The notes under the pieces are model-generated. The model did not search any database, was not told the origin of the DNA, and saw nothing but the letters and a program-made list of their open reading frames with translations. Both the position numbers and the translations under genes were made by a program. Shown piece by piece: positions 1 through 31,925 of a stretch of 64,000 nt of DNA (position 1 is its first letter; each line of letters begins with the position of its first letter). The stretch is from positions 62,001 to 126,000 of IMG/VR virus record IMGVR_UViG_3300043399_000877. One strand, given 5' to 3'.

Positions 1-2359
1 CTTCGATAGCATATGTTGCAGATTTGTCGGGATCTTCTTTTATTTTTTCTTCGCCTGCTGGTATCCTAACATCGAAATACTTTGCATATCTCATATAATT
101 GCGTGTATTTTTTGCTATAGCTGCTTCGCCCTTTTCAAATCTCTTACCCAGCACATGTATCGCATACCAGGTTGCCTCTTCTGAATCAGTTGCAAGTGCG
201 GCTTCGCCTTCGGGGAAACTGTGAGCATCATGATCGAACGTCTGCAAATAATATTTTGCAAGTCCAGCGTTGTCGGCAAAACGCATACGCATCTTTTTAA
301 AGTCATAACCGACATCAAAATACGCTGCACTCTCGGCGGCGTTCATTAGGTCACTTATTTTAGAATTTGGATCTTTTACCAGCTTATCTAGATTGTCTCG
401 AATTTCTTTCTTAACTGTTGGTGAAATACTTGCAAGTTTGGTAGCCCATTCTTTACTGCGCTTTATAAGTGCCATTTGCAATTTGGGTGATGCAAGTTCA
501 AGACTACCGTCTTCGTAGTCCCACACCCGCTGATTCTTGAGGTTCTTCTTAAACCAACGCTCGAATGCCACCCGGTCGTAAGACTTTCCGGGACCGATTT
601 GTTTTGGTAAAACTGGAGCATTTTCAGAGCGGTTGCGTTCGCTGTTGTATATTTTTTCAATTGGAACAATGTACTTCCCGGAAAAGAACACAGCCTGGTG
701 TGGTTCGTTGCTGTGTATAACACCGGCGCCCCGACTATCGGTTGCGTACTCGTACCCGAGTATTCGCATAATGCGATTCCATTCAACTGTTTTTTTAGGT
801 GCAGGCTTGCTGCGTCCTTTTTGCCATTCAGTGATCATGTTTTGTACTGGGTCTGCTGATTCTTTTATCTCAATTCCCATTGCTGCGGCTTTTGATATAA
901 ATTGTTCAACATCATCGGCTGAAACATTATCAGCTGGAAATGCTGCGTCAAGCTCAGCGTATGTTATAACTCCGGTTTGTTTGCCTTTTTTAAGTAACTC
1001 GTTCTTTTTGTCGACACCGGGTGCCGCCGGAGCGGCGGGGGTGTTGCCCAACGGTTCAAACTCAGTCTCCGGTGGTTCTGGTGCTGTTGGGGTGTTAGGT
1101 GCGTAATCCGGATTAGCTTTATAAAAGATCGCAAACGGTCGTTTTAACACGGTGCCATTTTCTTTATTTTTAAGAACAACACCATCCTTCTCGATACCGA
1201 TAACAGTAAAAAGTTTCTTGCCTTTTGGGCTGGTCGCGTTGGCATCATCACCGATTTTAAATTTTAATCCGGTTGTGTCTTTGACGTCGTTTCCGTAATC
1301 TTTGTTGGGATCATACAACTCAACATCTCCGTATGTTAAATCGAAGACCTCAGGGCCGTTATCCATGTCAATTTCTAAAGAACCCGATGATTTATATGCA
1401 TAAGAAACCGTTCCGGTTTTTTTATAATATTCATGACCGGGTTTTGTCACTATAACTTTATCACCATGGTGTATTAACTCCGTTTTTGGTAGGTTTTTTG
1501 GAGGCGCAGTCTTTTTCAGGTATTTGAGCGGTACCTCGATGTAATTGCTTTTAGGAGAACCAACCAAAGCCACTGATGCATGTGGCTGATCCATGTTATA
1601 GTCGTTGCCGTCAAAATGCATGCTCACAACCTTAGCCACAACTTTATCCGGTGCTTGGCTGTTGGACCAAGGTTTACTGTAATCCGTAAAAGCTGGGTTT
1701 ATTTCAACAAAATCACCCTTGCCAAAGTCGACCTTTATATCGCCCATTTTTTTCTTCTTGGCTAATTCCGCACCCATTACGCGAGTCACGTTCCACAACT
1801 TTGATATGTCAGGCCCGGCCTTGTCTTCTTCAAAACTAAATGCATTACTTAATGCTTCTTTTTCGATACGACTATATTCTTCTGGATCAAAGCCCTGTGA
1901 CGTCATATACTGACGCAATTTAGCCATATCGCGTTTGAACTGTTGTTCGGTATATCTTGCAATATCCAGTCCTGCATTGGCGTTACGCGGTGTAAACACC
2001 CATACGAACGGTAAGTCGCCCATGTATTCAACTGCGCTCGCATTACCGGTATTTTTAATTACTCTGAGAACATGCGATAGCGGATAGCTATAAACACCCA
2101 GGGGTGTATCGTATCCGCTGCGTGGGTTTACACCGATCTTTTCTATACCAGTGTAACTCACATAAAGGTCTTCCACCGGTGGATATGTTCTACCACGACT
2201 GTCAGATGATCCGGCCAACCGTTCGTATTTTAATAATTCTTCAGCAGTGTTTTCCTGATACTTTTTTAATTCATCATAATCTGCGGACCTCTGATCTAAT
2301 CTTGGTTGGCCCTTCTCACTGCGGCGGCGCTCTACAATTCGGATATCACGATATTTCAT
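1..2359 (-). CDS. Large late/virion-type protein, 3'-truncated by the window edge; ART-like scaffold with inserted KOW/SH3-like domains and a sigma70 region 1.1 domain, plus C-terminal helical repeats
   Basis: Not in the ORF track because it has no stop in the window. ATG at 2359 overlaps the upstream TGA. Manual translation: MKYRDIRIVERRRSEKG...YVSYTGIEKIGVNPRSGYDTPLGVYSYPL...WNRIMRILGYEY...IHSNEPHQAVFFS, paralogous to 2356..4968. Bases 860-1009 encode KKNELLKKGKQTGVITYAELDAAFPADNVSADDVEQFISKAAAMGIEIKE. Confidence 0.85.
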   Translation of the reverse strand, partial: MKYRDIRIVERRRSEKGQPRLDQRSADYDELKKYQENTAEELLKYERLAGSSDSRGRTYPPVEDLYVSYTGIEKIGVNPRSGYDTPLGVYSYPLSHVLRVIKNTGNASAVEYMGDLPFVWVFTPRNANAGLDIARYTEQQFKRDMAKLRQYMTSQGFDPEEYSRIEKEALSNAFSFEEDKAGPDISKLWNVTRVMGAELAKKKKMGDIKVDFGKGDFVEINPAFTDYSKPWSNSQAPDKVVAKVVSMHFDGNDYNMDQPHASVALVGSPKSNYIEVPLKYLKKTAPPKNLPKTELIHHGDKVIVTKPGHEYYKKTGTVSYAYKSSGSLEIDMDNGPEVFDLTYGDVELYDPNKDYGNDVKDTTGLKFKIGDDANATSPKGKKLFTVIGIEKDGVVLKNKENGTVLKRPFAIFYKANPDYAPNTPTAPEPPETEFEPLGNTPAAPAAPGVDKKNELLKKGKQTGVITYAELDAAFPADNVSADDVEQFISKAAAMGIEIKESADPVQNMITEWQKGRSKPAPKKTVEWNRIMRILGYEYATDSRGAGVIHSNEPHQAVFFSGKYIVPIEKIYNSERNRSENAPVLPKQIGPGKSYDRVAFERWFKKNLKNQRVWDYEDGSLELASPKLQMALIKRSKEWATKLASISPTVKKEIRDNLDKLVKDPNSKISDLMNAAESAAYFDVGYDFKKMRMRFADNAGLAKYYLQTFDHDAHSFPEGEAALATDSEEATWYAIHVLGKRFEKGEAAIAKNTRNYMRYAKYFDVRIPAGEEKIKEDPDKSATYAIE

Positions 2360-4968
2360 TGTTTGTATTTACCCACGTAATGTTTTAAATCTTGTACTTC
2401 AACTTCAGAATGATCACCATACACCCCATATGAAACTATTGCAACTCCGGGTTTCGGGAAAGACGTTATATAACCGGTAAACTTTTCAAGGCTGGTGCCA
2501 TCTCCCCACCAATCTGTGCTGAATTCAACAATATCCCCTAACGAGAAATTCGAAGGTTTTTTGTATGTAGATGAATTAAATTCAAAAACTTCACTAGCCT
2601 TTACTTTCAATGTTTTATTATTGATTAAAAATATATATTCGTAGCTCTCTTCGATGCCTACCAACATACCGGTATCACCGTTTTTGTTTACTTTGTATTT
2701 TTCACCCAACTTGAAACCATACCGATTTGGTTTTATTGGAGCGATAAATTCCGGTGCAGTCTCATCAAGTTCACCACCACGGTGCATGTCATGAATTTGA
2801 ATACGTTTGTTGTTCTCGGGAGTATTAGCTATCATTACAAGTTTCTGTAAACCGCTCATAACTTCTGCATACATGTCTCCGGGTTTAAACTTGCTCAGGT
2901 CATCATATAACGGAAACTTTTTCCTATATCTACGAATGGCCGAGGACTTCAACGCCATAACATCTTCGGCCTCCGGCCAAGGGCGTTGAAGAACGTTGAT
3001 TGCGTAATCTGCCGCATTGTCAGGACTTAGTTGAATTTGTGGTTCGCCCTTGGGGAATGCTTCATGCAAGACGTTGGCTGCATAATTATATGCGGTTTCC
3101 GGGTCTTTACTGATAGCCTCCTCGCCAGCCGGCCAAGGTTTACGCAAAATACGAGAAGCATACCTGTATGCTCGCCATGAATCATCGGCTATGGCAGATT
3201 CGGCGGCCGGCCACGGCCCCTTCTTTATCTGCTCTATGTATTCCATGATATGTTTGGGGTTTTTCAAAAACGCTTCGTCGGACACTTGTATGTCTTTAGG
3301 GTCACCGGTGTAAGCACTTTCCAAATCACGTATAGCTCGGTTAATGTCATATTCATCTTCGCCGCTGTTTACTAACTTGGCCAAACGATTTGCCTTGGCC
3401 TTTACCACAAGGTAACCGTATTTGCTGCTGGCGCCGTCGATTATGGACAACCAAAGGTCGTTGTCTACCACCAACTTATTAATAAGTTTTTCTGATTGTA
3501 TCTTAACAGTATCCGAATACAGTCCATGTATTTGGTCGTAGTTCTTGTAATGCACTTTTAACCAACGTTCAAATGTTATCGGGTCGTATTTTCCGCTGTT
3601 TATTTGATCAGTTGTATAAGGTGGTCTCACTCTGATATTTCTCGCAGTATTGCGAATCTTGCCGATAGGGGTAAAATAGGCACCGGATAGGAATACAGCC
3701 TGTGTTTCTTCACTGGGATGGATTAGTCCGCTGTCATTACGATCTACGATGAAATCATACCCGGCGACTCTCATCAAACGGTTCCATTCGATAATACTGG
3801 TCTTGGCTCTGGTATTTAAGTTGCTTTCTTCGCGTATTATGGATTCTTTTGGAAATGTAAAATATGGGTCTGGTTCCGGTTCAAATTCTAAATCATCAAT
3901 AACATCAAAATCTACAATATTATCATCAGAGGCGTCGGGTTCTTTTTTTGGTTCAGCGGCCGGTGATTTTAGCACTTTTAAGTATTCTGGTGGCAAGTCC
4001 TTTACTTTCGTCGCTTTTCCAAATATACTGATGCTGAGTTCGAAGGTTTGCCCGACTTTGTTTACAACCTCGCCTTCAAATCCTTCAAACGGTCCCTTGA
4101 CAACCTCAACAGTGTCACCAATTTTAGGCATAGCCTCTATATTAAAAGAGGGTTTCGATTTTTCGGCAGGAACATAATCTACCGGAACGCTTGTTTTTTT
4201 TAAATCGTTCAACGGAAGGCCCTGTAATGGGTAACTGTTAAAATTACCAGATCCCGAATATATTTTTACATCAGCAGTGGTTTCAGTTTTGGTTACCACC
4301 ATCCCCACAGTGTCGCTCCAACCGGTGTACTCGGGTAATTCAACAAAGTCACCCAGTTTTATATTGGAGGGGCCGGAGATTTTCGAAGCGTTTTTAAAAC
4401 TTCCAAAGTCTTTGCCTAACACTCGAGTTGCATTCCAGAACATAGACGCATATATGGTTGAGCCACTGGTTTGTTTGGCTGATGACCAAGCTTCTTGTAT
4501 TTTCTGATCGATAAACTCTTCAGTCAATCCCTGTTTTGATAAGAAAGATCTGATCTTTTCCATATCCTCAAGAAGCTGTTCTTCCGTATAGGTCGCAAGT
4601 TCCAATCCGCGTTCGGGATTCTTAGGTGTAAACAACCAAATATACGGTTGCTTGCCCATATACGGAACGTCACTCGGGTCATTAGATGCCTTCATACGCT
4701 TCAAAGCATATTCAAGAGGATAGCAATAAACACCGATAGGAGTATTATACCCGCTCACTGGATTGATGCCAATTTTGTCTAATCCAGTATAGCTTATATA
4801 CAGGTCGCGCATATCTATACCTGAGTCAAGGGCCATACGTTCCAAATCTTTTACAGCGTTTTCACGAAACTGATCTAAATCATCACTGCTGGCCCTGTCT
4901 TTGTGAACTCTGGGTACACCTTTTTCGCTTCTGCGACGTTCTACAATTAATAAATCACGATATCTCAT
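2356..4968 (-). CDS. Large late/virion-type paralog; ART-like scaffold with an inserted NusG-CTD-like KOW domain, helical repeats and C-terminal KOW/SH3-like domains
   Basis: 887-aa ORF; probable start MRYRDLLIVE at 4968, just downstream of TGATAAATAC. Contains IGDTVEVVKGPFEGFEGEV...SISIFGKATKV and WPxxExxIxxDxxxAYxYA repeats. Confidence 0.85.
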   Translation of the reverse strand: MRYRDLLIVERRRSEKGVPRVHKDRASSDDLDQFRENAVKDLERMALDSGIDMRDLYISYTGLDKIGINPVSGYNTPIGVYCYPLEYALKRMKASNDPSDVPYMGKQPYIWLFTPKNPERGLELATYTEEQLLEDMEKIRSFLSKQGLTEEFIDQKIQEAWSSAKQTSGSTIYASMFWNATRVLGKDFGSFKNASKISGPSNIKLGDFVELPEYTGWSDTVGMVVTKTETTADVKIYSGSGNFNSYPLQGLPLNDLKKTSVPVDYVPAEKSKPSFNIEAMPKIGDTVEVVKGPFEGFEGEVVNKVGQTFELSISIFGKATKVKDLPPEYLKVLKSPAAEPKKEPDASDDNIVDFDVIDDLEFEPEPDPYFTFPKESIIREESNLNTRAKTSIIEWNRLMRVAGYDFIVDRNDSGLIHPSEETQAVFLSGAYFTPIGKIRNTARNIRVRPPYTTDQINSGKYDPITFERWLKVHYKNYDQIHGLYSDTVKIQSEKLINKLVVDNDLWLSIIDGASSKYGYLVVKAKANRLAKLVNSGEDEYDINRAIRDLESAYTGDPKDIQVSDEAFLKNPKHIMEYIEQIKKGPWPAAESAIADDSWRAYRYASRILRKPWPAGEEAISKDPETAYNYAANVLHEAFPKGEPQIQLSPDNAADYAINVLQRPWPEAEDVMALKSSAIRRYRKKFPLYDDLSKFKPGDMYAEVMSGLQKLVMIANTPENNKRIQIHDMHRGGELDETAPEFIAPIKPNRYGFKLGEKYKVNKNGDTGMLVGIEESYEYIFLINNKTLKVKASEVFEFNSSTYKKPSNFSLGDIVEFSTDWWGDGTSLEKFTGYITSFPKPGVAIVSYGVYGDHSEVEVQDLKHYVGKYKQ

Positions 4969-4990
4969 TATAGTTCCCAAATTAGTTAGT

Positions 4991-5000
4991 GTATTTATCA
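4991..5000 (-). promoter_or_regulatory. Putative late promoter (TGATAAATAC)
   Basis: T4 late-like ATAAATA about 25 nt upstream of the ATG. The same motif precedes 5361..7697, the GIY-YIG gene, 51400..52170, the tRNA-Arg/endonuclease unit and the 63803 gene. Confidence 0.65.
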
Positions 5001-5065
5001 ACACAGGCTTGACAAGCACCTTTGTTGACGTTAGTATATGCTAGACCCCGCTGTTGGTATATCAT

Positions 5066-13374: not shown

Positions 13375-13451
13375 GGGGGATTAGCTCAATTGGTTAGAGC
13401 GCCGGACTCATAATCCGTAGGTTGCTGGTTCAAGTCCTGCATCCCCTACCA
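13375..13451 (+). tRNA. tRNA with CAT anticodon, probably Ile2 (lysidine type) rather than Met
   Basis: Cloverleaf: GGGGGAT/ATCCCCT acceptor stem, CT-CAT-AA loop, TTCAAGT T-loop, encoded CCA. The T arm resembles that of bacterial Ile2. Confidence 0.9.
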
Positions 13452-13455
13452 AAAT

Positions 13456-13538
13456 GGCCCCGTGGTGGAATGGTAGACACTGAAGACTTAAAATCTTCTG
13501 CCAATGGCGTGCCGGTTCGAGTCCGGCCGGGGCTACCA
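13456..13538 (+). tRNA. tRNA-Leu(TAA)
   Basis: GGCCCCG/CGGGGCT acceptor stem, CT-TAA-AA loop, long variable arm, encoded CCA. Confidence 0.93.
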
Positions 13539-13623
13539 TGTCTTTGACGATCACATCAGTCTTCGACGGAGGATCTTCAAAATAAAGTAAATATTGAAGC
13601 CCGTGGTGTGATCTTCTAAGACA
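13539..13623 (+). ncRNA. Candidate structured small RNA within the tRNA cluster
   Basis: TGTCTT/AAGACA and GATCACATCA/TGGTGTGATC closing helices, with an internal CTTCAA/TTGAAG hairpin. Confidence 0.4.
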
Positions 13624-13626
13624 TTC

Positions 13627-13656
13627 GGTTCCTTAGCTCAGCTGGATAGAGCAACT
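13627..13656 (+). pseudogene. 5' remnant of a tRNA (Arg-like)
   Basis: GGTTCCTTAGCTCAGCTGGATAGAGCAACT gives the 5' acceptor strand and D arm, then breaks off into GATAAATAC. Confidence 0.75.
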
Positions 13657-13674
13657 AGATAAATACTTTAAGAC

Positions 13675-13749
13675 GCCTCCGTGGTGAAAGGGATATCACA
13701 CGGGTCTTCTAAACCCAGGTTAGAGGTTCGAATCCTCTCGGGGGCGCCA
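13675..13749 (+). tRNA. tRNA-Arg(TCT)
   Basis: GCCTCCG/CGGGGGC acceptor stem, CT-TCT-AA loop, AGAGG-TTCGAAT-CCTCT T arm, encoded CCA. Confidence 0.9.
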
Positions 13750-13763
13750 ATTAAAGTATTAGT

Positions 13764-14564
13764 ATGAAAAAAGAAATATGTATTAAATGTGGTGGTCAGT
13801 TTTCGTTAAAAGGTGGAAACTTTTCTAGACATGTGAAATCCTGCAATGGCGTTAAAAAGGCCACTGTTCCAAAAGGAACCTGCGTCCATTGTTTTGAGGT
13901 TTTTGATTTAATTGATAAGCCCAAAGGTTGGATGGCAAACCATACCAGATGGTGTTCAAAAAATCCAAAACGAGAAGCGTATGTCGAAGCATTGATTTCG
14001 GGCAGCGGTAAAAACAATGTTACTCTCATGAACGAAAGCCGTAAACGGTCTGGCATCGTGAATCAATATGCAAAAGCAAAACTTTTAGGAAAACCGATAC
14101 CAGAAAACCCCGGAAAGGGAAAACCCGGGGTTCTTGGAAGAAGACATTCTGATAAAACTCGCGCCATCATTAGCCAAAAAGCCTTAGCTTCGAAACACCG
14201 ACGGTTAAAAAAGAATACTATATGGTATAATGGAGTTCTTTTGGATTCATCTTGGGAAGTCGAACTAGCCAAGAGACTGGACTACCTGGGTATCCGATGG
14301 ACTAGGCCCGATCCAATCCGGTGGACAGACGGAGACGAGGTCGAACACAACTACTTTCCGGACTTTTATTTGCCGGATTATGATTTATATCTAGATCCTA
14401 AAAACCCGCAAGCGATGAAAAGCCAACAGGAAAAACTGAAATACCTGTTGACGCAACACAAGAACGTCGTTATATTGCGAACATTAGGCGAGTGCAGGAG
14501 TTTTAGCCTGCAGGGACCGCCACCGTCATATCCCCACTTGTGCGTGGAAGGGGGTATGGTTTAA
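13764..14564 (+). CDS. Putative free-standing homing endonuclease (Zn fingers, NUMOD3-like motif, PD-(D/E)xK domain)
   Basis: CxxC...HxxxC motifs, GRRHSDKTRAIIS, and LDSSWE...YFPDFYL...YLDPK; AT-rich relative to neighbours. Confidence 0.75.
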   Translation: MKKEICIKCGGQFSLKGGNFSRHVKSCNGVKKATVPKGTCVHCFEVFDLIDKPKGWMANHTRWCSKNPKREAYVEALISGSGKNNVTLMNESRKRSGIVNQYAKAKLLGKPIPENPGKGKPGVLGRRHSDKTRAIISQKALASKHRRLKKNTIWYNGVLLDSSWEVELAKRLDYLGIRWTRPDPIRWTDGDEVEHNYFPDFYLPDYDLYLDPKNPQAMKSQQEKLKYLLTQHKNVVILRTLGECRSFSLQGPPPSYPHLCVEGGMV

Positions 14565-14727: not shown

Positions 14728-15339
14728 ATGTCTAAGAAAAAGATGACCGGGCTGCACACTGGGACCATCGAACGTTGGATGAAACAGTTTGCTGGTGATC
14801 TGGATCTCGAGCCTCATTTTGAGAAGTTTCGGACGCTGTCCGAAACTCGTGCGCGACACGCTCGTGAAATCCATGCACTGGATACCGAATACTCACAAGG
14901 TGATATGACCAAACGCGAATACCGTGAACGCAAGAATCCGTTGGACTCGGTTATGAAGGGCATCAAGCCTCGTATGCGAAAACAATTTGACGTCATGGTC
15001 TCGCATATCCTGCTCAAAGGCATCGATTGCCGTTGCTATATTTGCGGTGACCGACTACAGGGTGACGAACCGCACAACCGTGATCATGTGTTTCCCAAAG
15101 TGATGGGCTTCGGCATCGGCGGAAATATGATGCCGGCCCATTATGAATGCAACCAGAACAAAGACAGCCGCTTCCCGTATGAATATGAAGTGGAATTGGC
15201 GGTTGCAGCATATGAGCATGCCGGGATGCCGTTTCATCCGCGTATGGGGCGGCGGAGTATTGCTGAATACGATCAGCGATACTGGGACATCATTCGTCGG
15301 CAAACCAGCTTCGAATACATTCATAGGATTGTGGAATAA
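14728..15339 (+). CDS. HNH-domain protein
   Basis: CYICG...RDHVFPKVMG...NMMPAHYECNQNK. Confidence 0.75.
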   Translation: MSKKKMTGLHTGTIERWMKQFAGDLDLEPHFEKFRTLSETRARHAREIHALDTEYSQGDMTKREYRERKNPLDSVMKGIKPRMRKQFDVMVSHILLKGIDCRCYICGDRLQGDEPHNRDHVFPKVMGFGIGGNMMPAHYECNQNKDSRFPYEYEVELAVAAYEHAGMPFHPRMGRRSIAEYDQRYWDIIRRQTSFEYIHRIVE

Positions 15340-23464: not shown

Positions 23465-25572
23465 ATGCCAAAGATTGTTCACGAAGGCCTACTGGACGCA
23501 ACTTACGAAGACAGTGGTGCGGCTGTGATTGCCGAAATTGTTGACGACATCACTGGGCCGGAGTTTTTCCGATTCCAGAGCTGGGACACATCCAAACGGC
23601 ACGTTGGCATCAACCAGTTCATCGGACGCACGGTCCGAATCACCATCGAAACCCTTAACTAAGAGGACCACACAATGGAATTCAAATGGCTTATGATCTG
23701 CGTCGCAGTCAGCATCGTTGGCATTTCAGCCGGTGCGAGTGTTTCGGAATGGTCGCGACATCAGAGTGACGCCGAATGTCGTATCAATTACGCCAACACT
23801 GATCGCACCGCAGACGAAATCGAACAGATTTGCGGTTAACCGTATCCGTGATTGACACGGCTCTGGCAGTCTGTTAGTCATAGCATACAGAAACAGCAGG
23901 AGGCTACGATGGCCACGATTACTGTTCGACCCGGAAGTATCAATCCGGATGTCACGTTCGAGCGCACCTTCTATGGCGAGTCGGATGAGCGCCAGGTCCG
24001 GGAGATTGTCGAAACCTGGACTCGCATAACCGGACTGAACTTTGCTGCCATGCCCCGAGAGTGGAAAGTTATCGATGTTACTGGTGAAGAATACCTTTGG
24101 GTCAGCATTGTCCATCCGCTGGACAACCGGTCTGATGTGACCATGTTTTGGCTCCGTGAAACCAAGGAGAAATGAGATGAAAAATATCCTGGATCTGATG
24201 TCGACGGTCACCGAAGAAGTCGAAACTGCACATGAACTCCGGGTGCGTGTCAACGCTAACGGAACCTGGACTGCACGAGTCGTCGATTCGGCCAGCGGGC
24301 TGACGCTGCTGGACCGCGAGGGTGATCGTTATTTGGTTGCCAGCTCGGCGCTGGATGCTGGCGACGTTATCCGAGAACTCAACCAACTCTGTGCTTGACT
24401 GCACTGGCGGCAGATGCTAGACAGTATGGGCAACAAGGGAGGACACGATGGCACGGATGTTTAATGTATACGGTGTTCGTGACGGTGTCGAAACCTTTGT
24501 GGAAACTGTCAGCAATGCCGCCGAAGGCAAGGCCGCGCACCAGCGTATGAAACTGGCCGGTGTTTACGAATACATCCGGTGCCGCGACGTGCTGGGCGGG
24601 TTGCGCTTCGAGTATAATCTGGAAACTGGCCGCAAGACGGCATGAGAGGATACTGACCATGGAAGATGAAGGCCGAGTGATCGAAATCGTCGTTGCGCTT
24701 CGTGTTCGCGAAGATGCCGACGTGGCTGAGATTGTCAGCGAAATGGATTACAGCTTCGCCCACGCTGACATCATCGACACCGAAATCCGCGATATTATCA
24801 CTGAAATCTGAGGAGAGAAACATGACCAACCCCATCCAGCGTTACATCGATACCCCCAAACCCGGGCACCTTCCGCCGCAACCGAACCGTGATCTTGCTG
24901 TGACGCGCTTGGTTATGCGACTGCTCGGTCTGCGGTAATCGTCGTGCCGCGGCACATCATCCACGTGAACCGGCAGCATATTGCCATGAATGCGAAAGAC
25001 GGGGCTAACCGTCCCGTCTACACGATCAAAACCGGTTCACAGGTTCGCTATGCTCGCGAAGTGGAAATTGCAGGTCCTAGCCGTATGATATACGACGGGC
25101 GGCAATTGAGCTGCGGGGCGCGGGCTTGGATCGAAACCGACAGCGACATTCATCTCGTCGACGAGATGACATTTCAGGAAGCGAGGACGGTCGATGACCG
25201 ATGACGAAGTCCGAAACCTACCGTTAGGTGTCTACCGTTTGCACTGGAACAGTGGCGGCAGTTCGGTTGCCTCAGTGGGACAACTGCACGACGGAACCCG
25301 ATGGATTGCCCCGGCTAACTGGACAAGCCGGGAACCCCAAACCATGGGAACCATCGATTGGTGGGAACACATCAATCGCGTGGAACTGATCACAACTCAA
25401 TAAGGAAAATCCGATGAAAACTTTTGATGTCTACCTCAACGACGAACGAATCGATCGTGTGTTTTTCCGCTCTGATGACGTGGAGGAAGTCCGCGACTCG
25501 CTGATTCGGTGGGACAACTATGACCCCGCAATTGTGGTGAAACTGTTCGAACGAGACGCACAACCTGCTTGA
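23465..25572 (+). CDS. Cluster of about 10 small hypothetical genes (e.g. 23465-23662, 23909-24175, 24177-24398, 24448-24645, 24659-24811, 24944-25204, 25194-25403)
   Basis: SDs; promoters at 23408, 23852 and 24395; codon bias consistent with the plus strand. Confidence 0.65.
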
Positions 25573-25628
25573 CACGGGCGGCGGCGCCTGCTAGAAACTG
25601 ACTGTAACAGAAACAAAGGACGACGCAA

Positions 25629-26219
25629 ATGCCGAATTGGTGCTCCAACTCCCTCTATGTCACCGGCCCGACCCAGGTGATCAAAGACATGGCCGCTGCC
25701 GCCGAGAAGGGCGAGCTGCTGCAATTCGTATGTCCGGTTCCGCAGGAACTGACTGACACGGTGTCCGGCAGTTTCGGCGACACCGAAAAGCAGGCGGCGC
25801 TGGAAGCGAAACAATCCGCCAATGTGGAAAAATATGGCTACGCCACCTGGTATGACTTCTGCGTCAACGAGTGGGGCACCAAGTGGGACATCGGTGGCGA
25901 AGACTGTCATATGGAAGTCACTGATGTGGGTGACGGTTCCGGCAACAGCACCCTGAAGATCAGCTTCGACAGCGCCTGGGCCCCGCCGATTGCGGCCTAC
26001 GAGAAGATGGAGGGCCTGGGTCTTGAGGTTCGCGCCTTCTACTACGAACCCGGCATGGCGTTCTGCGGTCAGTTCTTCGAAGGCGAAGACGCTTACTGGA
26101 ACATCACCGGCAACAGTGACTGGGTTTCGGAAAACATCCCAGACGAAATCGACACTGAAATGAACATCAGCGAGTCGATGGCTGAATGGGAAACGGACGA
26201 AGAAACCGACGAAGCCTAA
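25629..26219 (+). CDS. DUF1281/YubB-like ferredoxin-fold protein
   Basis: MPNWCSN, WYDFCVNEWGTKWD, FDSAWAPP, YYEPGMAFCG. Confidence 0.75.
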   Translation: MPNWCSNSLYVTGPTQVIKDMAAAAEKGELLQFVCPVPQELTDTVSGSFGDTEKQAALEAKQSANVEKYGYATWYDFCVNEWGTKWDIGGEDCHMEVTDVGDGSGNSTLKISFDSAWAPPIAAYEKMEGLGLEVRAFYYEPGMAFCGQFFEGEDAYWNITGNSDWVSENIPDEIDTEMNISESMAEWETDEETDEA

Positions 26220-26430
26220 GGAATCTGCTTGACTCCTGGGTTGGCTGAGCATATATTGCACTGGTAACCCAGGAGGACAAGATGAAGATGCAGATCAAAC
26301 AATCGGACCTGAATCATCGCAATCCCGTCGCCCGTGCGATGGCCCGGGATGCAGCTCAATTCCGCTCTCGCGTCGTGCGGGATCGCACCAAATACTCCCG
26401 CAAGGCCAAACATAAAAAAGGAGAGTGGTG

Positions 26431-26948
26431 ATGAAGCAATACATCGACGTCGAAACTGGGATCGGTAAGTTCACTGTTGAACTCGTGATGGATGACGACA
26501 TGAACTTCCCCTATTCTATCTGGGATGACCAAGGCGCTGTGGTGGCTGACGGAACCATCAGTGTCGCTTTCGATAGCCTGCGCGATGTCGCAGAGGCGGC
26601 GGTAGGTCGCTATATCCGTGAACTGGATCTTGTGGACTGAAGGAGAACAAGATGGAAACCATGACTCGTGTTACGAGTGAGACTGACCTCGAAGGCATCC
26701 TGAAGGTGGCCCGGGAGTGGCTCGGAGATCGAGTGCAGAAAAATCTGCGCATCTTTGTCAAATCCGGCGACATCCGCCTGGAGATGCCGGATGCCGATCT
26801 CACGCAGGATACCTGGGACGGCACTCTGCTGATCCACTTCAATCGTGACTTTTCGGCAGCCGACCTCGTCAACTACATCGTAGGTGGCGTTCAGGTTGAC
26901 GAAATGAGTTTCATTGAACCGCGCACCCTGCGGCTTTGGTGGGACTAA
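26431..26948 (+). CDS. Two small hypothetical proteins (26431-26640, 26652-26948)
   Basis: AGGAG SDs. Confidence 0.65.
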
Positions 26949-27171
26949 CCGACAAAGCCGTTGACACGGCCAGGAAGACTTGCTAGACAAGGCAAGTAAA
27001 CAGAAACGCTAACGGTTCAACAGAGGATACGATGCCCCGACCTCGAGACTCGCCCTAGCCGGGCATGCCAGAGACGCCCTGGAATAATTAGATAAAATTT
27101 TAGATTGATGGAGGTCCTGGGTATGACCGCCGCTTAAAAACTGCCCAACCCTCGCAACAAGGAGCCAAATA

Positions 27172-27222
27172 TGGGAACCAGGTCAATGATCGGTGTCCGC
27201 AACACGGACGGAACCATCACCA
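27172..27222 (+). pseudogene. Truncated 5' copy of gene 27977..28432
   Basis: AAGGAG SD followed by MGTRSMIGVRNTDGTIT, versus MGTRGMIGIKNADGTID in the intact copy. Confidence 0.8.
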
Positions 27223-27888
27223 TTTGACTTTACCGCGACCCTGAATAAAATCCGGTCCCGGTTGATTAACGCTCCGTATGCACTGAACTCCGTTGTTCCA
27301 CCATTTTAGTTTGGAAACACCTTCCGAGTTCTTTTTTCGCCAGTCAGCATCTTGATTGATGCCTTTGTTTATACCTACAATTTCCCCAGTATTCCATCTT
27401 GGATCATTTGGTGATACTTTTATTTTTTCACCTGTTGATACTAGCTTTGCTGGTATTGAAGTAAATTCCGGATTGCGATTTTGTTTGCGTCCCTTTTGTG
27501 ATGGTGGAGATATTCCTAAAAGCAAATTTCGATCTCTTACTTTTTGTTTTGCTTCTTCATTCCATCCCCTATTTCCGTCACCACCGTCTGTTTGGTTTGT
27601 TAGGACGCCGGTCCCCAAATCCCGTCTACCATAAGTCGATATAAGTTCTATCTCAAGGCCAGTGGCTTGTTCACGAGTAAGGTTGTTGTGAACTATCTCG
27701 ATTAAAGGATCTTTTCCTTCTTCTAATAGTTTTCGAATTGCGTTGAGTTTGTGTTGGCCCGACTCGGGAATTGGATTTAGTTTTGCCTCTTTTAAGTGAG
27801 CAAATCGACGACGACCTTTACCCATTCCTACATAAAAGGGTTCTAGCGTGTCAGGGTTTCGATATAGGTATGTATAATAATTGTTCAT
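27217..27888 (-). mobile_element. GIY-YIG family homing endonuclease gene
   Basis: YYTYLYRNP..PFYVGMGKGRRRFAH..EIELISTYGR..LTNQTDGGDG and C-terminal KWWNNG motif. AT-rich, opposite strand to neighbours, with a GATAAATAC promoter just upstream. Confidence 0.85.
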
Positions 27889-27976
27889 ATTGTATTTATC
27901 GAACAATTATTTTTCGGATGGCTACTTGACAATAGGCGCTGGTTGCGCTATACACTAGGAAACAAAGGAGACACAC

Positions 27977-28432
27977 ATGGGAACGCGCGGAATGATTGGC
28001 ATCAAGAATGCCGATGGAACCATCGATGCGATTTATTGTCATTGGGACTCGTATCCGGAACACAATGGTCGTATCCTGAGCGAACACTACCAGGACGAAT
28101 CCAAAGTTCGTGAACTAATCGGTCTCGGCGACATCAGCTCGCTGCGTGAAGAGATCGGTGAACAGCATCCCTTCGACACCTACCACCTGAAAAAAGAAGA
28201 TATGGATCCCAGATGGGATCGCTGGACCGTAGCATACGGTCGTGACCGAGGCGAGACCGGCATTGAAGCCAAGAACTACCACAACGAAACCTTCTTTGTG
28301 GGCGGGGCTAAATCGTGCGGTGCCGAATACGCATACCTTTTCGATAATGGCGAGTGGGGCGTGGTTGGAATCGGAATCCCGCGCCGGCCCACGTTCAGCA
28401 AACTCGAAGCGGTTCTTCAAGACAGTGATTGA
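27977..28432 (+). CDS. Conserved phage hypothetical protein (MGTR...YCHWDSYP family)
   Basis: Promoter at 27926 and SD; distant paralog of 19207..19650. Confidence 0.8.
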   Translation: MGTRGMIGIKNADGTIDAIYCHWDSYPEHNGRILSEHYQDESKVRELIGLGDISSLREEIGEQHPFDTYHLKKEDMDPRWDRWTVAYGRDRGETGIEAKNYHNETFFVGGAKSCGAEYAYLFDNGEWGVVGIGIPRRPTFSKLEAVLQDSD

Positions 28433-28481
28433 CACGCCAGCCAGCCCGTGCTAGACGGGCTGACGAAACGGAGGGCAGCGA

Positions 28482-28844
28482 ATGTTCAAAAAAGCGATTG
28501 CACTGTCTCTGGCTGTGATGCTGGCAGCATGTGAAGTTCCGGAATCCCCGCGAGTGTGGGACGACTATCTGGATCCGTATATGAGTGCCCGTGGATACAC
28601 CATTGACGTGGATGGAAAAACCATTCTCAAGAATGGGTTTCCGGTGTGGGTGGACGAGCCGTGTTTCGGACGCGGGTGCCGTGGCAGTTATCCGATTGTC
28701 ACTCGTGAACTAGCCGAGGCGGTGCGTTTGGACCTTTTGGCTGCAATCGATGCTGCTCAAGACGAGTATGTTGCTGATATTTCCGAGGTTATCGGTCTCG
28801 AGCCGGTCGTGGATGAACCGGAAAAAACCGAGCAACTGCCTTGA
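28482..28844 (+). CDS. Putative lipoprotein
   Basis: Signal peptide with lipobox LAAC. Confidence 0.65.
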   Translation: MFKKAIALSLAVMLAACEVPESPRVWDDYLDPYMSARGYTIDVDGKTILKNGFPVWVDEPCFGRGCRGSYPIVTRELAEAVRLDLLAAIDAAQDEYVADISEVIGLEPVVDEPEKTEQLP

Positions 28845-28895
28845 CAGCCGTTCGCGTTGATGCTATAACCTACTGACAGACACAGGAGGAACGTC

Positions 28896-30838
28896 ATGGC
28901 ACGTGAGACTCGCAAGATTACCAACCGGATTTATGACGCTGTCGACGAAGGCACGCTCAGCTGGGAACAAGTGGCCAAAGGCGCTCTCAGCTACATGAGC
29001 GAATATGACATTGCCGAAATGGCGCATAACGAAGAATTCTTCCTTTACGAAGATGAACTCGAGGATGAAGATGATGAAGACGATTCCGATGACGATGATG
29101 ACGATCATCGTGGCACCCGTGGTGAAGTAAACGATATGGACGCCACTCGGCCGGGTTATTTCGCAATGTTCAGCACCGACGGCAACCGTCGTGTCCAGCA
29201 GATCCTTGACGACACGATCCGGATTGCGCCGGGCTTGACCGATGATGAAATTTGGCAATATTCCTACAGCCGACTGGAACTGCTGAGCCGTGAAGACGGT
29301 TTCGGAGAAGCAACTGACACCGAAGTGCGCGAGAACCTTTGGGGTGCGCTGATTGATGGCAGGCACTTCCAAAGCTGGAAATCGGTCAATTACTGGTTCT
29401 ATGTGGACTGGATCCTTGAACTTTCGAACAAAGACATCAAACGTGACCGTTTTCAGGAAACGGTCGATCTCAGGACGGTCAAGACTGATTTGGCGGTTGA
29501 CAGCGGCCGCTGAGTCAGCTATAAAAACAGGACAAGGCAACAGAGGAAGACACAATGGAAAAGTTTCCGCACGTTGAAGATCGGCAGATCCGTGACCTGC
29601 TGGAGTTTGGCTGGAACGGTGACGAAGACGAGATTTGTCAGGCGCTGACCAAAACTCGTCGCGCGTTCAACGAAGACGAACAGAACGAAATGATTCCCGG
29701 TCCGGTTATTGCCGCTCGCGAGTCAGCAATCGACGATGCCGAGGGCTGGTGGAACGAAGAAGGCGACGGGTTCCGCGCCGCCGAGTCGCTGCGCGATTAC
29801 TGGAAGGTGTGATATGCAGATGATCGAAATCAGCCGTGCAACCGAACAAGCGATCGTCAGCACCTGGGACAGTATCGCCTCGGACGCCTACGACCTCTGC
29901 GAAGGCGACAACAGCATCGCGATGGAAATGGTGTTGGACGCAAACCGAATGACGTTTGCCGGTTTTGAAGCCAGCGACCGGGAAATCCGGGCCCTGTGTC
30001 TGGAACACGGGTTCGGGTTGGTTTGTGATGTGCTGAGTCGAAGGATCCAGCTTCTTTAGGTTGACAGGGCCCCAGGGCCCTGCTATAACGCTCGCAAGAC
30101 AACCGGGAGACAGTGATGAACTCGACCATGGCGGCACTGGACTATCTGCTCTACTACGACGAAGATCAAGACATTGACGAATCGGGGATGACCGAGTTCA
30201 GTCCGGTTGAGGCTGCTCATGTGCGCGAGCTCGTAGAGCGCGGTCTCCTGAAATCCGGAGAAGTGTTCAGCCACAAGGGCTGGCACCACGTTCTGTATAA
30301 CGAAGACAGCCAGTGGTGGGGGTGCATGTGGGATGGTCCCACCGGTGATGAGCGCCGCTACGATTCCAGATACAATGAATGGGAACAGTGAGGTCCGGCA
30401 GATGCGACTTTCCGAGTTTATCGACCGACTGGAGTGGCTCAAAGCCGCACACGGTGATGTGGAGATCGGAGTGCTGGAGGGCATAACCATCTACGGCATC
30501 ATTCTGCAGACCCAACAACTGGGCAACGACGACACCACAGTGACCCACGTCAGTATCCTGAGTGATGACGATGTGGTGATTTACTGACAGGAACGAACTA
30601 ACTGTTGACAGAAGAGTCTGCCGACAGTATAAACACGACACGCAAGCGAGAGAAGAACACGATGTATTCCATCCTACGATACACCCAAACCACTGTTGAA
30701 ATCATCGAAGGGTTCGATGACAAGCAAGTGGCACTCGATTGGGCCAAGGCCAACTGTGGACTTGACCCGCGCTGGTCGTTGATCGAAACACCGAACGGTG
30801 TTCCGACAATCACCGTCCGTCCTGCCCCCAAGAACTGA
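28896..30838 (+). CDS. Six acidic small hypothetical proteins (28896-29513, 29555-29812, 29814-30059, 30113-30391, 30402-30587, 30662-30838)
   Basis: Individual promoters at 28841, 29497, 30061 and 30605; SDs. Confidence 0.7.
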
Positions 30839-30848
30839 AAGAGAGAAA

Positions 30849-31925
30849 ATGACCTTCTATATCAAGAACAACTCCAGCTACCGTGTTTCCGACAATCCGG
30901 GCGCCGAGGTTTACGATCATCTTCCGGTCGGAACCTACATCATCGACCAGGATCAGTTCGGTAACTTTTACCTGAATCTGATCGACGACTTCGTCCAGCC
31001 CGGCAAGATTTACGGCAACACCCTGCGTCATGCCGATCGAATCCTGCGGACGTTCATGGATCGCCCCAACAGCACCGGTGTGATGCTGGCTGGTGAGAAA
31101 GGTTCCGGCAAGAGCTTGCTGGCCAAGACGCTCAGCACCAACGCTCGCGAGCAGGGCGTGAGCACCATCGTGATCAACCGTCCCTGGTCGGGCGACAACT
31201 TCAACAAGCTGATGCAGGATATCCAGCAACCGGTCATCGTGCTGTTCGACGAGTTCGAGAAGGTCTACGGCGACGGCGACCAGGAAGCGATCCTTACCCT
31301 GTTCGACGGCATGTTCCCCACCAAGAAACTGTTCGTTCTGACCACCAACGACAAGTGGCGTATCGACCGTCACATGCGGAACCGTCCGGGTCGGATCTAC
31401 TACATGCTGGAATTCAAAGGCCTGGAACCGGACTTTATCCTGGAATACTGCCAAGAAAATCTGCGGAACAAGGACCACATCGACGGCGTGCTGAAGATCA
31501 GCACCCTGTTCAGCGAGTTCAACTTCGACATGCTCAAGGCCATGGTGGAAGAAATGAACCGCTACAACGAGACCGCGCAGGAAGTGATGGCCATGCTGAA
31601 CACCAAGCCGGAATACTCGGAATCGGTGGAATACGAATTGCAGATGACTGTTGACGGTGTTCCGGTTGAAGACGATGACCTGGGCGATCGTCGCTGGCGC
31701 GGTAATCCGATGGTGCAGCAGATCAACACCAGCTTCTATAAGGTCACTGGCAAGGATGACGATGGCGATGACAACGGTGACTGGGAGCCGGTGAACATGA
31801 CGCCCAAACACCTGAAGTCGGTGGACGGCAAGAGCGGTCGCTTTGTGTTCCAGAACGGCCGGGCTTGCATTGTGCTGACGCGCAAGCAACCGGAAGTCTA
31901 CAACTACAGCCAGATGGACTTCTAA
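30849..31925 (+). CDS. AAA+ ATPase
   Basis: GEKGSGKS, VLFDEFEK, LTTN, RNRPGR. Confidence 0.88.
   Translation: MTFYIKNNSSYRVSDNPGAEVYDHLPVGTYIIDQDQFGNFYLNLIDDFVQPGKIYGNTLRHADRILRTFMDRPNSTGVMLAGEKGSGKSLLAKTLSTNAREQGVSTIVINRPWSGDNFNKLMQDIQQPVIVLFDEFEKVYGDGDQEAILTLFDGMFPTKKLFVLTTNDKWRIDRHMRNRPGRIYYMLEFKGLEPDFILEYCQENLRNKDHIDGVLKISTLFSEFNFDMLKAMVEEMNRYNETAQEVMAMLNTKPEYSESVEYELQMTVDGVPVEDDDLGDRRWRGNPMVQQINTSFYKVTGKDDDGDDNGDWEPVNMTPKHLKSVDGKSGRFVFQNGRACIVLTRKQPEVYNYSQMDF

What the first reader, a model, noticed from the sequence alone, without database searches (positions are those of the whole stretch)
27160..28432. GIY-YIG insertion leaves a dead 5' stub and supplies a new promoter plus recoded gene start
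Seen: SD + MGTRSMIGVRNTDGTIT, then an inverted AT-rich GIY-YIG gene, then a fresh promoter, SD and the full gene MGTRGMIGIKNADGTIDAIY. This is the same logic as the tRNA-Arg case at 13.6 kb. Inference: a recurring 'disrupt and restore' homing strategy in which the element carries a divergent, cleavage-resistant replacement of its target's 5' end, with no intron or intein.
Basis: partly seen in the sequence, partly recalled or inferred. Interest (0 to 1): 0.6.

Follow-up and report, generated by a model that had tools for sequence, protein, structure and literature searches.

The report
Homing nuclease cassette replaces gene's start
A selfish nuclease gene in a giant phage has inserted at codon 16 of a conserved gene and keeps that gene working by bringing its own promoter, ribosome site and first 16 codons, leaving the old start as a dead stub; stubs at the same codon occur in five phage lineages.

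Summary
The window belongs to a 382-kb phage genome. It holds an 18-codon stub ORF (27171-27227), a 223-aa GIY-YIG nuclease gene on the other strand (27217-27888), a phage-type promoter (27926-27954), a ribosome site, and an intact 151-aa gene (27977-28432).

A nuclease-free relative (L004) is decisive. Its intact gene starts with exactly the stub's 48 bases, and its left flank differs from the window at 4 of 459 bases. The window therefore carries an 806-base insert (27219-28024) plus a converted tract up to base 90 of the gene.

Nine lineages carry this nuclease clade, always head-to-head with a homolog of the same gene. Five have a stub of 15-16 codons that resembles the alleles of nuclease-free relatives. 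A second near-isogenic pair (L010 and P0006) differs only at residues 5, 6, 10, 12 and 25.

Restored genes that have a stub always carry Gly5 and a non-Gly residue 25. About 92% of homologs carry Ser5 and Gly25.

Cleavage, its position and resistance are untested. The closest known case is the replacement of gene 3' ends by endonuclease ORFs in fungal mitochondria. I found no phage 5'-end case in the papers searched, so I rate this a new variant of a known kind.

The parts
26961..26989 (+). Native promoter of the target gene (TTGACA-N15-GCTAGACA); it now drives only the leader and the stub.
   Evidence: It is one of 24 matches to TTGACA-N15-GCTA in the window, against 0.11 expected. It sits at the same place in the nuclease-free relatives L004-L007.
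26990..27170 (+). Native 5' leader of about 180 nt, with ribosome site AAGGAG at 27159-27164. It contains a hairpin at 27110-27131.
   Evidence: It is conserved in L004-L008. In L006 two hairpin pairs are changed on both sides, seen by eye in the alignment. No Rfam family matches.
27171..27227 (+). Stub ORF of 18 codons plus stop. Its first 16 codons (27171-27218) are the native start of the target gene.
   Evidence: All 48 bases are identical to the start of the intact gene in L004, and the 459-base left flank has 4 mismatches. The peptide is MGTRSMIGVRNTDGTI followed by TI*.
27219..28024 (.). Insert of 806 bases relative to the nuclease-free allele: nuclease gene, spacer, promoter, ribosome site and codons 1-16. 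The same 9 bases, GGAACCATC, end both the stub and the new codon 16, so the boundary can slide by up to 9 bases.
   Evidence: Alignment with L004-L007. The insert is 776/806 identical to the one in L008.
27217..27888 (-). GIY-YIG homing endonuclease gene, 223 aa. Its stop codon overlaps stub codon 16 by 2 bases.
   Evidence: Pfam PF22945, E 4e-9, 37 bits; phrog_314 'homing endonuclease'. Residues Y19, R27, H31, E79 and N98 are invariant in 24 homologs. The N-terminal domain matches PDB 9u75, a GIY-YIG protein, at E 6e-11.
27893..27900 (-). GATAAATA motif four bases upstream of the nuclease ATG; a candidate late-type promoter.
   Evidence: NATAAATA-N2-8-ATG precedes 20 ORFs of the genome. The motif is strand-biased: GATAAATA occurs 4 times on one strand and 30 on the other. 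It is kept upstream of the nuclease ATG in L008, L010, L012, L015, L095 and L117. Its function is inferred.
27926..27954 (+). Element-borne promoter TTGACA-N15-GCTATACA, 22 bases upstream of the new ATG, so the 180-nt native leader is missing.
   Evidence: It matches the phage's own promoter motif. It is conserved in L008 and similar in L010, L012, L015, L097 and L117. It is absent in L095, where the two ATGs are only about 31 bases apart.
27965..27970 (+). Element-borne ribosome-binding site AAGGAG.
   Evidence: Read directly from the sequence. From about -17 to -1 the region is homologous to the native ribosome-site region.
27977..28432 (+). Intact target gene, 151 aa, of the phrog_1987 family (function unknown). 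Codons 1-16 (27977-28024) come from the element. Bases 49-90 (28025-28066) are a converted tract. The rest is L004-like.
   Evidence: phrog_1987, E 3e-35. Against L004 there are 10 mismatches in bases 49-90 and 4 in the following 410 bases. The AlphaFold2 model has mean pLDDT 95.

Best explanation
This is a free-standing GIY-YIG homing-endonuclease cassette. Its mobile unit is the nuclease gene (antisense to the target), a phage-type promoter, a ribosome site and codons 1-16 of the target gene.

The cassette sits between codons 16 and 17 of a conserved phage gene of unknown function (phrog_1987). The insertion cuts off the native promoter, the 180-nt leader, the ribosome site and the first 16 codons. 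These survive as an 18-codon stub. The cassette's own start signals and 16 codons, fused in frame to codon 17, keep the gene whole. No intron or intein is involved.

Inferred steps, none of them shown:
- In a mixed infection the nuclease cuts nuclease-free (Ser5/Gly25) alleles near codons 16-30.
- The break is repaired from the cassette-bearing genome. The stub plus leader serve as the left homology arm and the gene body as the right arm. This would explain why each recipient keeps its own 5' end as a stub and gains a short converted tract on the right.
- The restored copy escapes cutting because it differs in sequence (Gly5, non-Gly25 and neighbouring bases).
- The native promoter now transcribes the stub and runs antisense into the nuclease gene. 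The nuclease may be made late, from its GATAAATA motif.
For: Shown:
- The nuclease-free relative L004 has an intact gene whose first 48 bases equal the stub. The left flank has 4 mismatches in 459 bases. To the right of the site there are 10 mismatches in bases 49-90 and then 4 in 410.
- L005, L006, L007 and four further contigs that carry P0001 also go from the 98-aa gene through a 222-base spacer to the 151-aa gene, with no nuclease.
- Nine lineages with this nuclease clade (53-97% identity) all have it head-to-head with a phrog_1987 homolog. More distant GIY-YIG relatives (47% identity or less) do not.
- A stub of 15-16 codons ends at the homologous codon in the window, L008, L009, L010/L011 and L095. 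The nuclease stop codon lies at or within 6 bases of the junction in four of these five.
- Stubs resemble the alleles of nuclease-free relatives. The window's equals L004. L008's equals the L007 allele at 47 of 48 bases. L010's stub peptide equals the P0006 N-terminus, and the rest of the L010 protein is identical to P0006 except at residues 5, 6, 10, 12 and 25.
- The nuclease keeps the GIY-YIG catalytic residues in all 24 homologs.
- The new promoter fits the phage's own motif.
- Every restored gene that has a stub carries Gly5, and every stub carries Ser5. Among 120 homologs, 111 have Ser5/Gly25 and 8 have Gly5 with Ser or Asn at 25. Residues 5 and 25 change together in 6 of 6 independent supported pairs.
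Against: - No cleavage, cut site or homing event has been observed. Resistance of the restored allele is only inferred.
- Two nuclease-bearing lineages (L012-14 and L117-119) have no stub and keep Ser5/Gly25. Two more (L015 and L097) have only a fragment of the promoter's -35 element next to the nuclease's 3' end. The coding stub is therefore not universal in the clade.
- Gly5/Ser25 alleles also exist without the nuclease (L005, L006, L112, L115, L116). The 'replacement' start is thus an ordinary allele too.
- The window and L008 elements are 96% identical while their flanks are about 93% identical. That pair alone does not prove separate invasions.
- In L010 an extra 152-aa ORF lies between the stub and the nuclease. 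In L095 there is no promoter between the nuclease and the gene.
- The genomic context of P0006 could not be fetched.
Confidence: 0.75

Rival explanations
1. The nuclease is an ordinary intergenic free-standing homing endonuclease. The stub is a by-product of a single illegitimate recombination and has since been inherited vertically. The new start is merely flanking donor DNA carried along, not part of a reproducible unit.
For: L012-14 and L117-119 carry the nuclease between genes with no stub. The 'recoded' start is a natural allele in the nuclease-free L005 and L006. The window and L008 could share their insertion by descent, since the element is 96% identical and the flanks about 93%.
Against: Stubs end at the same codon in five lineages whose target proteins are only about 35-67% identical to the window's. 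Stubs also resemble the living alleles of nuclease-free relatives, including amino-acid differences (NTDG in the window and L004; NENG in L008 and L007). The L010 stub peptide equals the P0006 N-terminus while the two proteins differ at only five N-terminal residues. A dead stub inherited from a single old event should drift, not match living alleles.
Confidence: 0.15
2. The direction is the reverse. The stub-bearing arrangement is ancestral, and the nuclease-free genomes such as L004 arose by deleting the cassette.
For: The direct repeats (ribosome site to codon 16, with 9 identical bases at the ends) could support such a deletion. The nuclease-free Gly5/Ser25 alleles L005 and L006 switch from native-type to element-type sequence close to the ATG, at different points (-5 and +6), which is what such deletions would produce.
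Against: L004 differs from the window at 10 positions in bases 49-90, just right of the site. A deletion between the repeats would have kept the window's version there. Ser5/Gly25 is the state of 111 of 120 homologs and of 15 further nuclease-free loci, so it is the ancestral form. Deletion may explain L005 and L006, but not L004 or L007.
Confidence: 0.05
3. The stub is not dead. It encodes a functional leader peptide or acts as a regulatory or decoy site, and is kept by selection.
For: The stub keeps its promoter, its structured leader, its ribosome site and an open frame in five lineages.
Against: The tails after codon 16 are unrelated in sequence and length (TI*, TT*, SIFSFA*, P*). Four nuclease-bearing lineages have no coding stub. 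The stub sequences simply equal the local native alleles.
Confidence: 0.05

Closest known systems
Mobile endonuclease ORFs (mORFs) of fungal mitochondria that carry a foreign gene C-terminus: Allomyces macrogynus atp6; Glomus sp. atp6, atp9, cox2, nad3; Rhizopus atp9; Mortierella cox2 (PMC3630166)
   Same: An endonuclease ORF (GIY-YIG or LAGLIDADG) inserts inside a conserved protein gene and brings a divergent copy of the gene end it displaces. The native end is left as a nearby duplicate. That native piece matches the endonuclease-free sister taxon, while the inserted piece is more divergent. No intron or intein is needed.
   Different: In mitochondria the 3' end (C-terminus) is replaced, and the ORF is often in frame and co-transcribed with the gene. 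Here the 5' end is replaced, which also requires a ribosome site and, in most lineages, a promoter. The nuclease is antisense. The host is a giant phage. The displaced part includes a 180-nt leader.
Intronless homing by free-standing seg (GIY-YIG) and mob (HNH) endonucleases of T4-like phages, such as SegF/gene 56, SegG/gene 32 and MobE/nrdB (review PMC2988022)
   Same: A free-standing phage GIY-YIG gene lies next to the gene it is thought to cut, flanking markers are co-converted, and self-protection comes from sequence polymorphism rather than from interrupting the site.
   Different: The T4 elements sit between genes and leave no duplicated gene fragment. The review contains no occurrence of words beginning 'duplicat'. 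Here the insertion point is inside the coding sequence.
Genes split by endonuclease insertion: Aeh1 nrdA/mobE, T4 gene 60-39/mobA, phage 25 gene 43 (PMC2988022)
   Same: A phage homing endonuclease inserts into a coding region, and the host gene keeps its function without splicing.
   Different: In those cases both halves are kept and assemble as two polypeptides. Here the short N-terminal piece is discarded and replaced by a copy that the element carries.
Intron- or intein-encoded homing endonucleases and collaborative homing, such as F-CphI with the psbA intron (PMC6083498; mentioned in PMC10448857)
   Same: They target a conserved coding sequence, and the gene is restored after insertion.
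   Different: Restoration there is by RNA or protein splicing. Here no Rfam intron family was found across 26900-28050, and the gene is contiguous from its new ATG.

Membership tests
GIY-YIG homing endonuclease (free-standing) | An N-terminal GIY-YIG catalytic domain with the conserved Tyr/Tyr, Arg, His, Glu and Asn residues | tested here: met
   Pfam PF22945 scores 37 bits against a cut-off of 27. Y19, R27, H31, E79 and N98 are invariant, and Y7 and Y9 nearly so, in 24 homologs. The profile matches PDB 9u75, a GIY-YIG protein, at E 6e-11.
GIY-YIG homing endonuclease (free-standing) | A separate DNA-binding region C-terminal to the catalytic domain | tested here: inconclusive
   Residues from about 120 to 223 are conserved across the clade (PPSQKGRKQNR, LKWWNNG, GRGKVKW). 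No Pfam domain was assigned to them. More distant relatives carry NUMOD3, PF07460.
GIY-YIG homing endonuclease (free-standing) | Presence/absence polymorphism at a fixed site between close relatives | tested here: met
   The window against L004, and L008 against L007-like alleles, with the same junction in both.
GIY-YIG homing endonuclease (free-standing) | Site-specific cutting of the endonuclease-free allele, followed by copying of the gene into it | not testable with these tools
   This needs enzyme assays or phage crosses.
End-replacing mobile endonuclease element (mitochondrial mORF type) | A duplicated gene end: an inserted copy fused in frame to the gene core, and a displaced native copy nearby | tested here: met
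   New codons 1-16 are in frame with codon 17 onward, and the native codons 1-16 lie 806 bases upstream. The replaced end is the 5' end, not the 3' end.
End-replacing mobile endonuclease element (mitochondrial mORF type) | The native copy matches the endonuclease-free sister, and the inserted copy is more divergent | tested here: met
   The stub is 48/48 identical to L004. The new start differs from L004 at about 14 of its first 48 bases, and matches the L005/L006-type allele instead.
End-replacing mobile endonuclease element (mitochondrial mORF type) | Only the hybrid gene is expressed; the displaced end is silent or useless | not testable with these tools
   No RNA data were available. The stub keeps a promoter and a ribosome site, so it is probably transcribed and translated into an 18-residue peptide. 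This is inferred.
Group I intron or intein with a homing endonuclease | A self-splicing RNA fold or intein blocks flanking the endonuclease | tested here: not met
   No Rfam family matches on 26900-28050 at E of 1 or less. The nuclease is on the opposite strand. The gene is a contiguous ORF from its own ATG.

The most novel reading that the evidence does not exclude
This would be a distinct class of phage homing element, a 'start-carrying' cassette that can live inside a coding sequence because it brings the gene's expression signals and first codons.

Its spread would have repeatedly rewritten the first 30 codons of a widespread phage gene. On this reading, the tightly coupled Ser5->Gly and Gly25->Ser/Asn changes, which flank the insertion point and arose at least 6-10 times, are the immunity signature left by the nuclease. 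The nuclease-free Gly5/Ser25 alleles (L005, L006, L112, L115, L116) would then be footprints of cassettes that have since been lost.
Probability: 0.35. Interest if true: 0.75.

Novelty: new variant of a known kind. Interest (0 to 1): 0.62.

Why it matters
Homing endonucleases are usually said to enter coding sequences only inside introns or inteins, or else to sit between genes or split a gene in two. This case shows a fourth route in phages: replacing the gene's start together with its promoter and ribosome site. It mirrors the 3'-end replacement known from fungal mitochondria.

- It gives a clean natural test bed. There are near-isogenic pairs with and without the element, and two candidate immunity codons on either side of the insertion point.
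- It shows how a selfish element can rewire regulation of a host gene, since a 180-nt structured leader is bypassed.
- It is a practical warning for annotation. Short 'orphan' ORFs next to nuclease genes may be displaced gene starts, and mosaic N-termini in phage protein families may record past nuclease traffic.

Tried and rejected
- GenBank phages: no DNA relative of the locus. No nuclease of this clade was found; the best full-length hit is 30% identical and is not next to the target gene.
- Single-protein scans of IMG/VR with the target gene and with the 266-aa ORF found nothing close. The P0006 scan found only distant homologs, all nuclease-free and all Ser5/Gly25.
- The generic sigma-70 scan did not flag the new promoter, because it requires a T at the last position of the -10 hexamer. 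A motif derived from the phage's own promoters was used instead.
- Function of the target protein: no Pfam family. There is no PDB match by sequence, by Foldseek (best E 0.08) or by VIA-align (best Z 4.1, weak likeness to anticodon-binding domains). The function stays unknown.
- A contact between residues 5 and 25 could not be measured, because model coordinates are not exposed. Only the hairpin register is known (strands 5-10 and 16-21).
- A genome-wide scan for other duplicated gene starts or ends within 3 kb found only this case, tandem paralogs and internal repeats. A first, slower script timed out.
- The tree-based test linking nuclease presence to Gly5 had too few independent pairs to be informative.
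- The genome search could not reach the records behind L005, L006 or L010, so the 13.6-kb tRNA site could not be compared with relatives.
Full report
**What is in the window**

The window is bases 62001-126000 of a 381,886-base virus record, a giant phage. Searches show the following between 26949 and 28432.
- A native promoter, TTGACA-N15-GCTAGACA, at 26961-26989.
- A leader of about 180 nt.
- A ribosome site at 27159-27164.
- A short ORF from ATG 27171 to 27227, reading MGTRSMIGVRNTDGTITI*.
- A 223-aa ORF on the minus strand, 27888 down to 27217. Its stop codon overlaps codon 16 of the short ORF by two bases.
- A second promoter, TTGACA-N15-GCTATACA, at 27926-27954, and a ribosome site at 27965-27970.
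- A 151-aa gene at 27977-28432, beginning MGTRGMIGIKNADGTIDAIY.

**Identity of the two genes**

The minus-strand ORF is a GIY-YIG nuclease.
- It matches Pfam PF22945 at 37 bits against a cut-off of 27, and phrog_314 'homing endonuclease'.
- A profile of its relatives matches a solved GIY-YIG protein, 9u75, at E 6e-11.
- Y19, R27, H31, E79 and N98 are invariant in 24 homologs.

The 151-aa gene belongs to phrog_1987, a family of unknown function found in cyanophages and many large phages. Its AlphaFold2 model is confident (pLDDT 95). The model has no convincing match among solved structures.

**The decisive comparison**

A word search found close homologs of the 151-aa protein, and their contigs were fetched. 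In L004 (95% protein identity), L005 (83%), L006 (79%) and L007 (70%), the upstream 98-aa gene is followed by a 222-base spacer and then the 151-aa gene. The gene tables of four more contigs carrying P0001 show the same order. None has a nuclease or a stub.

Alignment shows that window 26760-27218 equals L004 1-459 with 4 mismatches, all more than 287 bases upstream of the ATG. The 48 stub bases are therefore exactly the first 16 codons of L004's intact gene.

To the right of codon 16, the window's gene differs from L004 at 10 positions in bases 49-90. In the next 410 bases it differs at only 4.

The window is thus an L004-like genome with three changes:
- an 806-base insert at 27219-28024;
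- the same 9 bases, GGAACCATC, at the end of both the stub and the new codon 16;
- a converted tract of about 42 bases to the right of the insert.

The new first 16 codons are not invented. They match the allele found in the nuclease-free L005 and L006.

**Recurrence across phages**

Homologs of the nuclease were collected and their contexts fetched from assemblies, IMG/VR and metagenomes. Nine lineages carry a nuclease 53-97% identical to the window's. In all nine it lies head-to-head with a phrog_1987 homolog. GIY-YIG relatives at 47% identity or below have no such neighbour.

| Lineage | Nuclease identity to window | What lies beside the nuclease's 3' end |
|---|---|---|
| Window | 100% | Stub MGTRSMIGVRNTDGTI, then TI* |
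| L008 | 97% | Stub MGTRSMIGVRNENGTI, then TI*; junction bases identical to the window's |
| L009 | 73% | Stub MATRSTIAIQNSDGTV, then TT* |
| L010/L011 | 71% | Stub MGTRSGIGIKNADGTV, then SIFSFA*; an extra 152-aa ORF lies between stub and nuclease |
| L095 | 65% | Stub MSTHSFVGVQVGDVI, then P* |
| L012-14 | 70% | No stub |
| L117-119 | 67% | No stub |
| L015-17 and L096 | 59% | Only a fragment of the promoter's -35 element |
| L097 | 53% | Only a fragment of the promoter's -35 element |

In the five stub-bearing lineages the coding stub ends at the homologous codon.

The stubs resemble living alleles.
- The window's stub equals L004.
- L008's matches the L007 allele at 47 of 48 bases, including the NENG-for-NTDG amino-acid difference.
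- L010's stub peptide equals the N-terminus of P0006. The L010 protein is 96.7% identical to P0006, and all five differences fall at residues 5, 6, 10, 12 and 25.

This is a second near-isogenic pair with the same pattern, although the genomic context of P0006 could not be fetched. A dead fragment from one ancient event would not keep matching living alleles. The arrangement therefore seems to be re-created each time the element enters a new genome, or the stubs keep recombining with living alleles.

**A signature in the restored gene**

Among the 120 best homologs, 111 begin xTRS...HWDGY and 8 begin xTRG...HWD(S/N)Y. Fifteen further nuclease-free IMG/VR loci are all Ser5/Gly25.

Every stub has Ser5. 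Every restored gene that lies behind a coding stub or a promoter fragment has Gly5, with Ser, Asn or Cys at position 25 wherever the sequence reaches that residue. The two stub-less nuclease-bearing lineages keep Ser5/Gly25. They carry other changes in the same motif: HND in L012, and SQY in place of AIY in L117.

A tree was built without the first 32 alignment columns. On it, each of the two residues changes at least 10 times, and in 6 of 6 independent supported pairs they change together (p 0.03).

The two codons (bases 13-15 and 73-75) flank the insertion point at base 48. There are two readings:
- both lie in the tract that the element carries and converts;
- one gives resistance and the other compensates in the protein. 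The model places residue 5 at the start of a hairpin (strands 5-10 and 16-21), opposite residue 21 and near residue 25.

Gly5/Ser25 alleles without a nuclease exist in L005, L006, L112, L115 and L116. They may be resistant alleles, sources of the element's start, or footprints left after the cassette was lost. L005 switches from native-type to element-type sequence at about -5 and L006 at about +6 relative to the ATG. Loss by recombination between the two repeats would produce exactly this. This is inference.

**How it most likely works**

- Shown: the anatomy, the insertion relative to nuclease-free relatives, the fixed junction, the converted tract, the conserved catalytic residues, and the fit of the promoter to the phage's own motif (24 copies in the window against 0.11 expected).
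- Inferred: the nuclease cuts Ser5/Gly25 alleles near the insertion point, and the break is repaired from a cassette-bearing genome. The stub and leader act as the left homology arm and the gene body as the right arm. This reproduces a stub made of the recipient's own sequence.
- Inferred: the restored copy is immune through sequence differences, as in the intronless homing of T4 seg genes (PMC2988022).
- Inferred: the native promoter now makes a transcript that covers the stub and runs antisense through the nuclease gene.
- Inferred: the nuclease ATG is preceded by GATAAATA-N4. That motif precedes about 20 ORFs of this genome, is strand-biased, and resembles the late promoter consensus of T4 as I recall it.

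The promoter is not essential to the design. In L095 the two ATGs are only about 31 bases apart, with a ribosome site and no promoter between them. There the gene must be read through from upstream.

**Rivals**

- One accidental duplication inherited vertically. This is unlikely, because the stubs resemble the alleles of nuclease-free relatives and there are two near-isogenic pairs.
- L004 arising by deletion of the cassette. This is contradicted by the 10 differences in bases 49-90, and by Ser5/Gly25 being the family-wide state.
- A functional stub peptide. The tails after codon 16 are unrelated, and four nuclease-bearing lineages have no coding stub.
- An assembly artefact. The same junction is seen in independent assemblies (L008, and L010 with L011).

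**Comparison with what is known**

The nearest known case is in fungal mitochondria. There, mobile endonuclease ORFs insert into atp6, atp9, cox2 or nad3 and bring a foreign C-terminal piece. The native C-terminus stays downstream and matches the sister species (Allomyces macrogynus and Glomus sp., PMC3630166).

The present case mirrors that at the 5' end. It therefore also has to supply translation signals and usually transcription signals, and it occurs in a phage.

In T4-like phages, free-standing endonucleases either sit between genes or split a gene into two working halves (PMC2988022). That review contains no occurrence of words beginning 'duplicat'. Further full-text searches turned up no phage example of 5'-end replacement. 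The library does not hold all journals, so an earlier report cannot be excluded.

I rate this a new variant of a known kind.

**Limits**

- No enzyme or RNA data exist.
A fragment resembling a tRNA 5' half lies at about 13626-13655. A complete tRNA-Arg(TCT) lies at 13675-13749, followed by a 266-aa endonuclease-like ORF that is not GIY-YIG. No relatives were found for comparison.
- A scan of the whole genome found no other protein gene with a displaced start or end.

Noticed in passing
window 12194-44235 (24 sites, e.g. 26961, 27926, 28429, 28841): The motif TTGACA-N15-GCTA occurs 24 times against 0.11 expected. Of these, 22 are on the + strand, typically just ahead of a small gene. This looks like the phage's own early promoter, with an extended -10 element, placed in front of many of the small genes in this cluster.
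   Followed up: partly
window 26990-27170, hairpin at 27110-27131: The target gene has a 180-nt leader conserved in L004-L008. Its hairpin GGAGGTC...GACCGCC becomes GGAGGAG...CTCCGCC in L006, two pairs changed on both sides (seen by eye). No Rfam family matches. The cassette bypasses this leader, so the restored gene may escape whatever the leader controls.
   Followed up: partly
window 13375-14564: tRNA-Met, tRNA-Leu and tRNA-Arg(TCT) lie together. Between Leu and Arg, at about 13626-13655, is a fragment resembling a tRNA 5' half (GGTTCCTTAGCTCAGCTGGATAGAGCAAC). Directly after tRNA-Arg comes a 266-aa ORF that matches phrog 'endonuclease' and 'Holliday junction resolvase' families. It has no Pfam hit and is not GIY-YIG. 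No relatives were found to test it.
   Followed up: partly
window 14728-15339: A 203-aa ORF with a weak HNH match (19.6 bits, below the cut-off) lies just downstream of the 266-aa endonuclease-like ORF. It may be a second mobile nuclease at the tRNA cluster.
   Followed up: no
whole genome (G000); in the window, 27893-27900 on the minus strand: NATAAATA followed by 2-8 bases and an ATG precedes 20 ORFs of 60 aa or more. The motif is strongly strand-biased (GATAAATA 4 against 30). It suggests a T4-late-like promoter giving very short or no leaders, and the nuclease gene uses it.
   Followed up: partly
L010 3323-3781 (minus strand); the same in L011: In this lineage an AT-rich 152-aa ORF of unknown function lies between the stub and the nuclease's 3' end, on the target's strand. 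Its only hit is a faint phrog_3253 match. It may be cargo or a second insertion at the same junction.
   Followed up: partly
window 27900-27925 and the matching place in L008, L010, L012, L015, L117: Between the nuclease ATG and the -35 element of the new promoter, each of these lineages appears to have a short inverted repeat of differing sequence, followed by a conserved GGAT/GGGA stretch (for example ATCGAA...TTCGGATGG, CCCAGG...CATTGGGA, CCTATGCCATTAGGATGG). This was seen by eye only. Its role is unknown; it could stop antisense read-through or act as an operator.
   Followed up: no
window 27977-28432 (protein): The phrog_1987 protein folds with very high confidence (pLDDT 95). Its best solved-structure matches are only Z about 4 (anticodon-binding-like domains) and Foldseek E 0.08. 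This is a widespread phage protein with no recognised fold or function. Its invariant residues include T3, R4, Y20, H22, D24 and an R89-D90-R91 triplet.
   Followed up: partly
genome 61345-67019 (window 1-5019, minus strand): Two large tandem paralogs (887 aa and 1004 aa) share their N-termini (MRYRDLLIVERRRSEKG and MKYRDIRIVERRRSEKG). The duplication scan picked them up. They are not a stub case.
   Followed up: partly
window 25000-31000 compared with genome 64-67 kb and 183-185 kb: GC content is uneven. The cluster of small genes around the finding is about 0.50-0.60 GC, while two other sampled regions are 0.34-0.49. The nuclease gene's 0.41 GC is low for its neighbourhood but similar to those two regions.
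   Followed up: no
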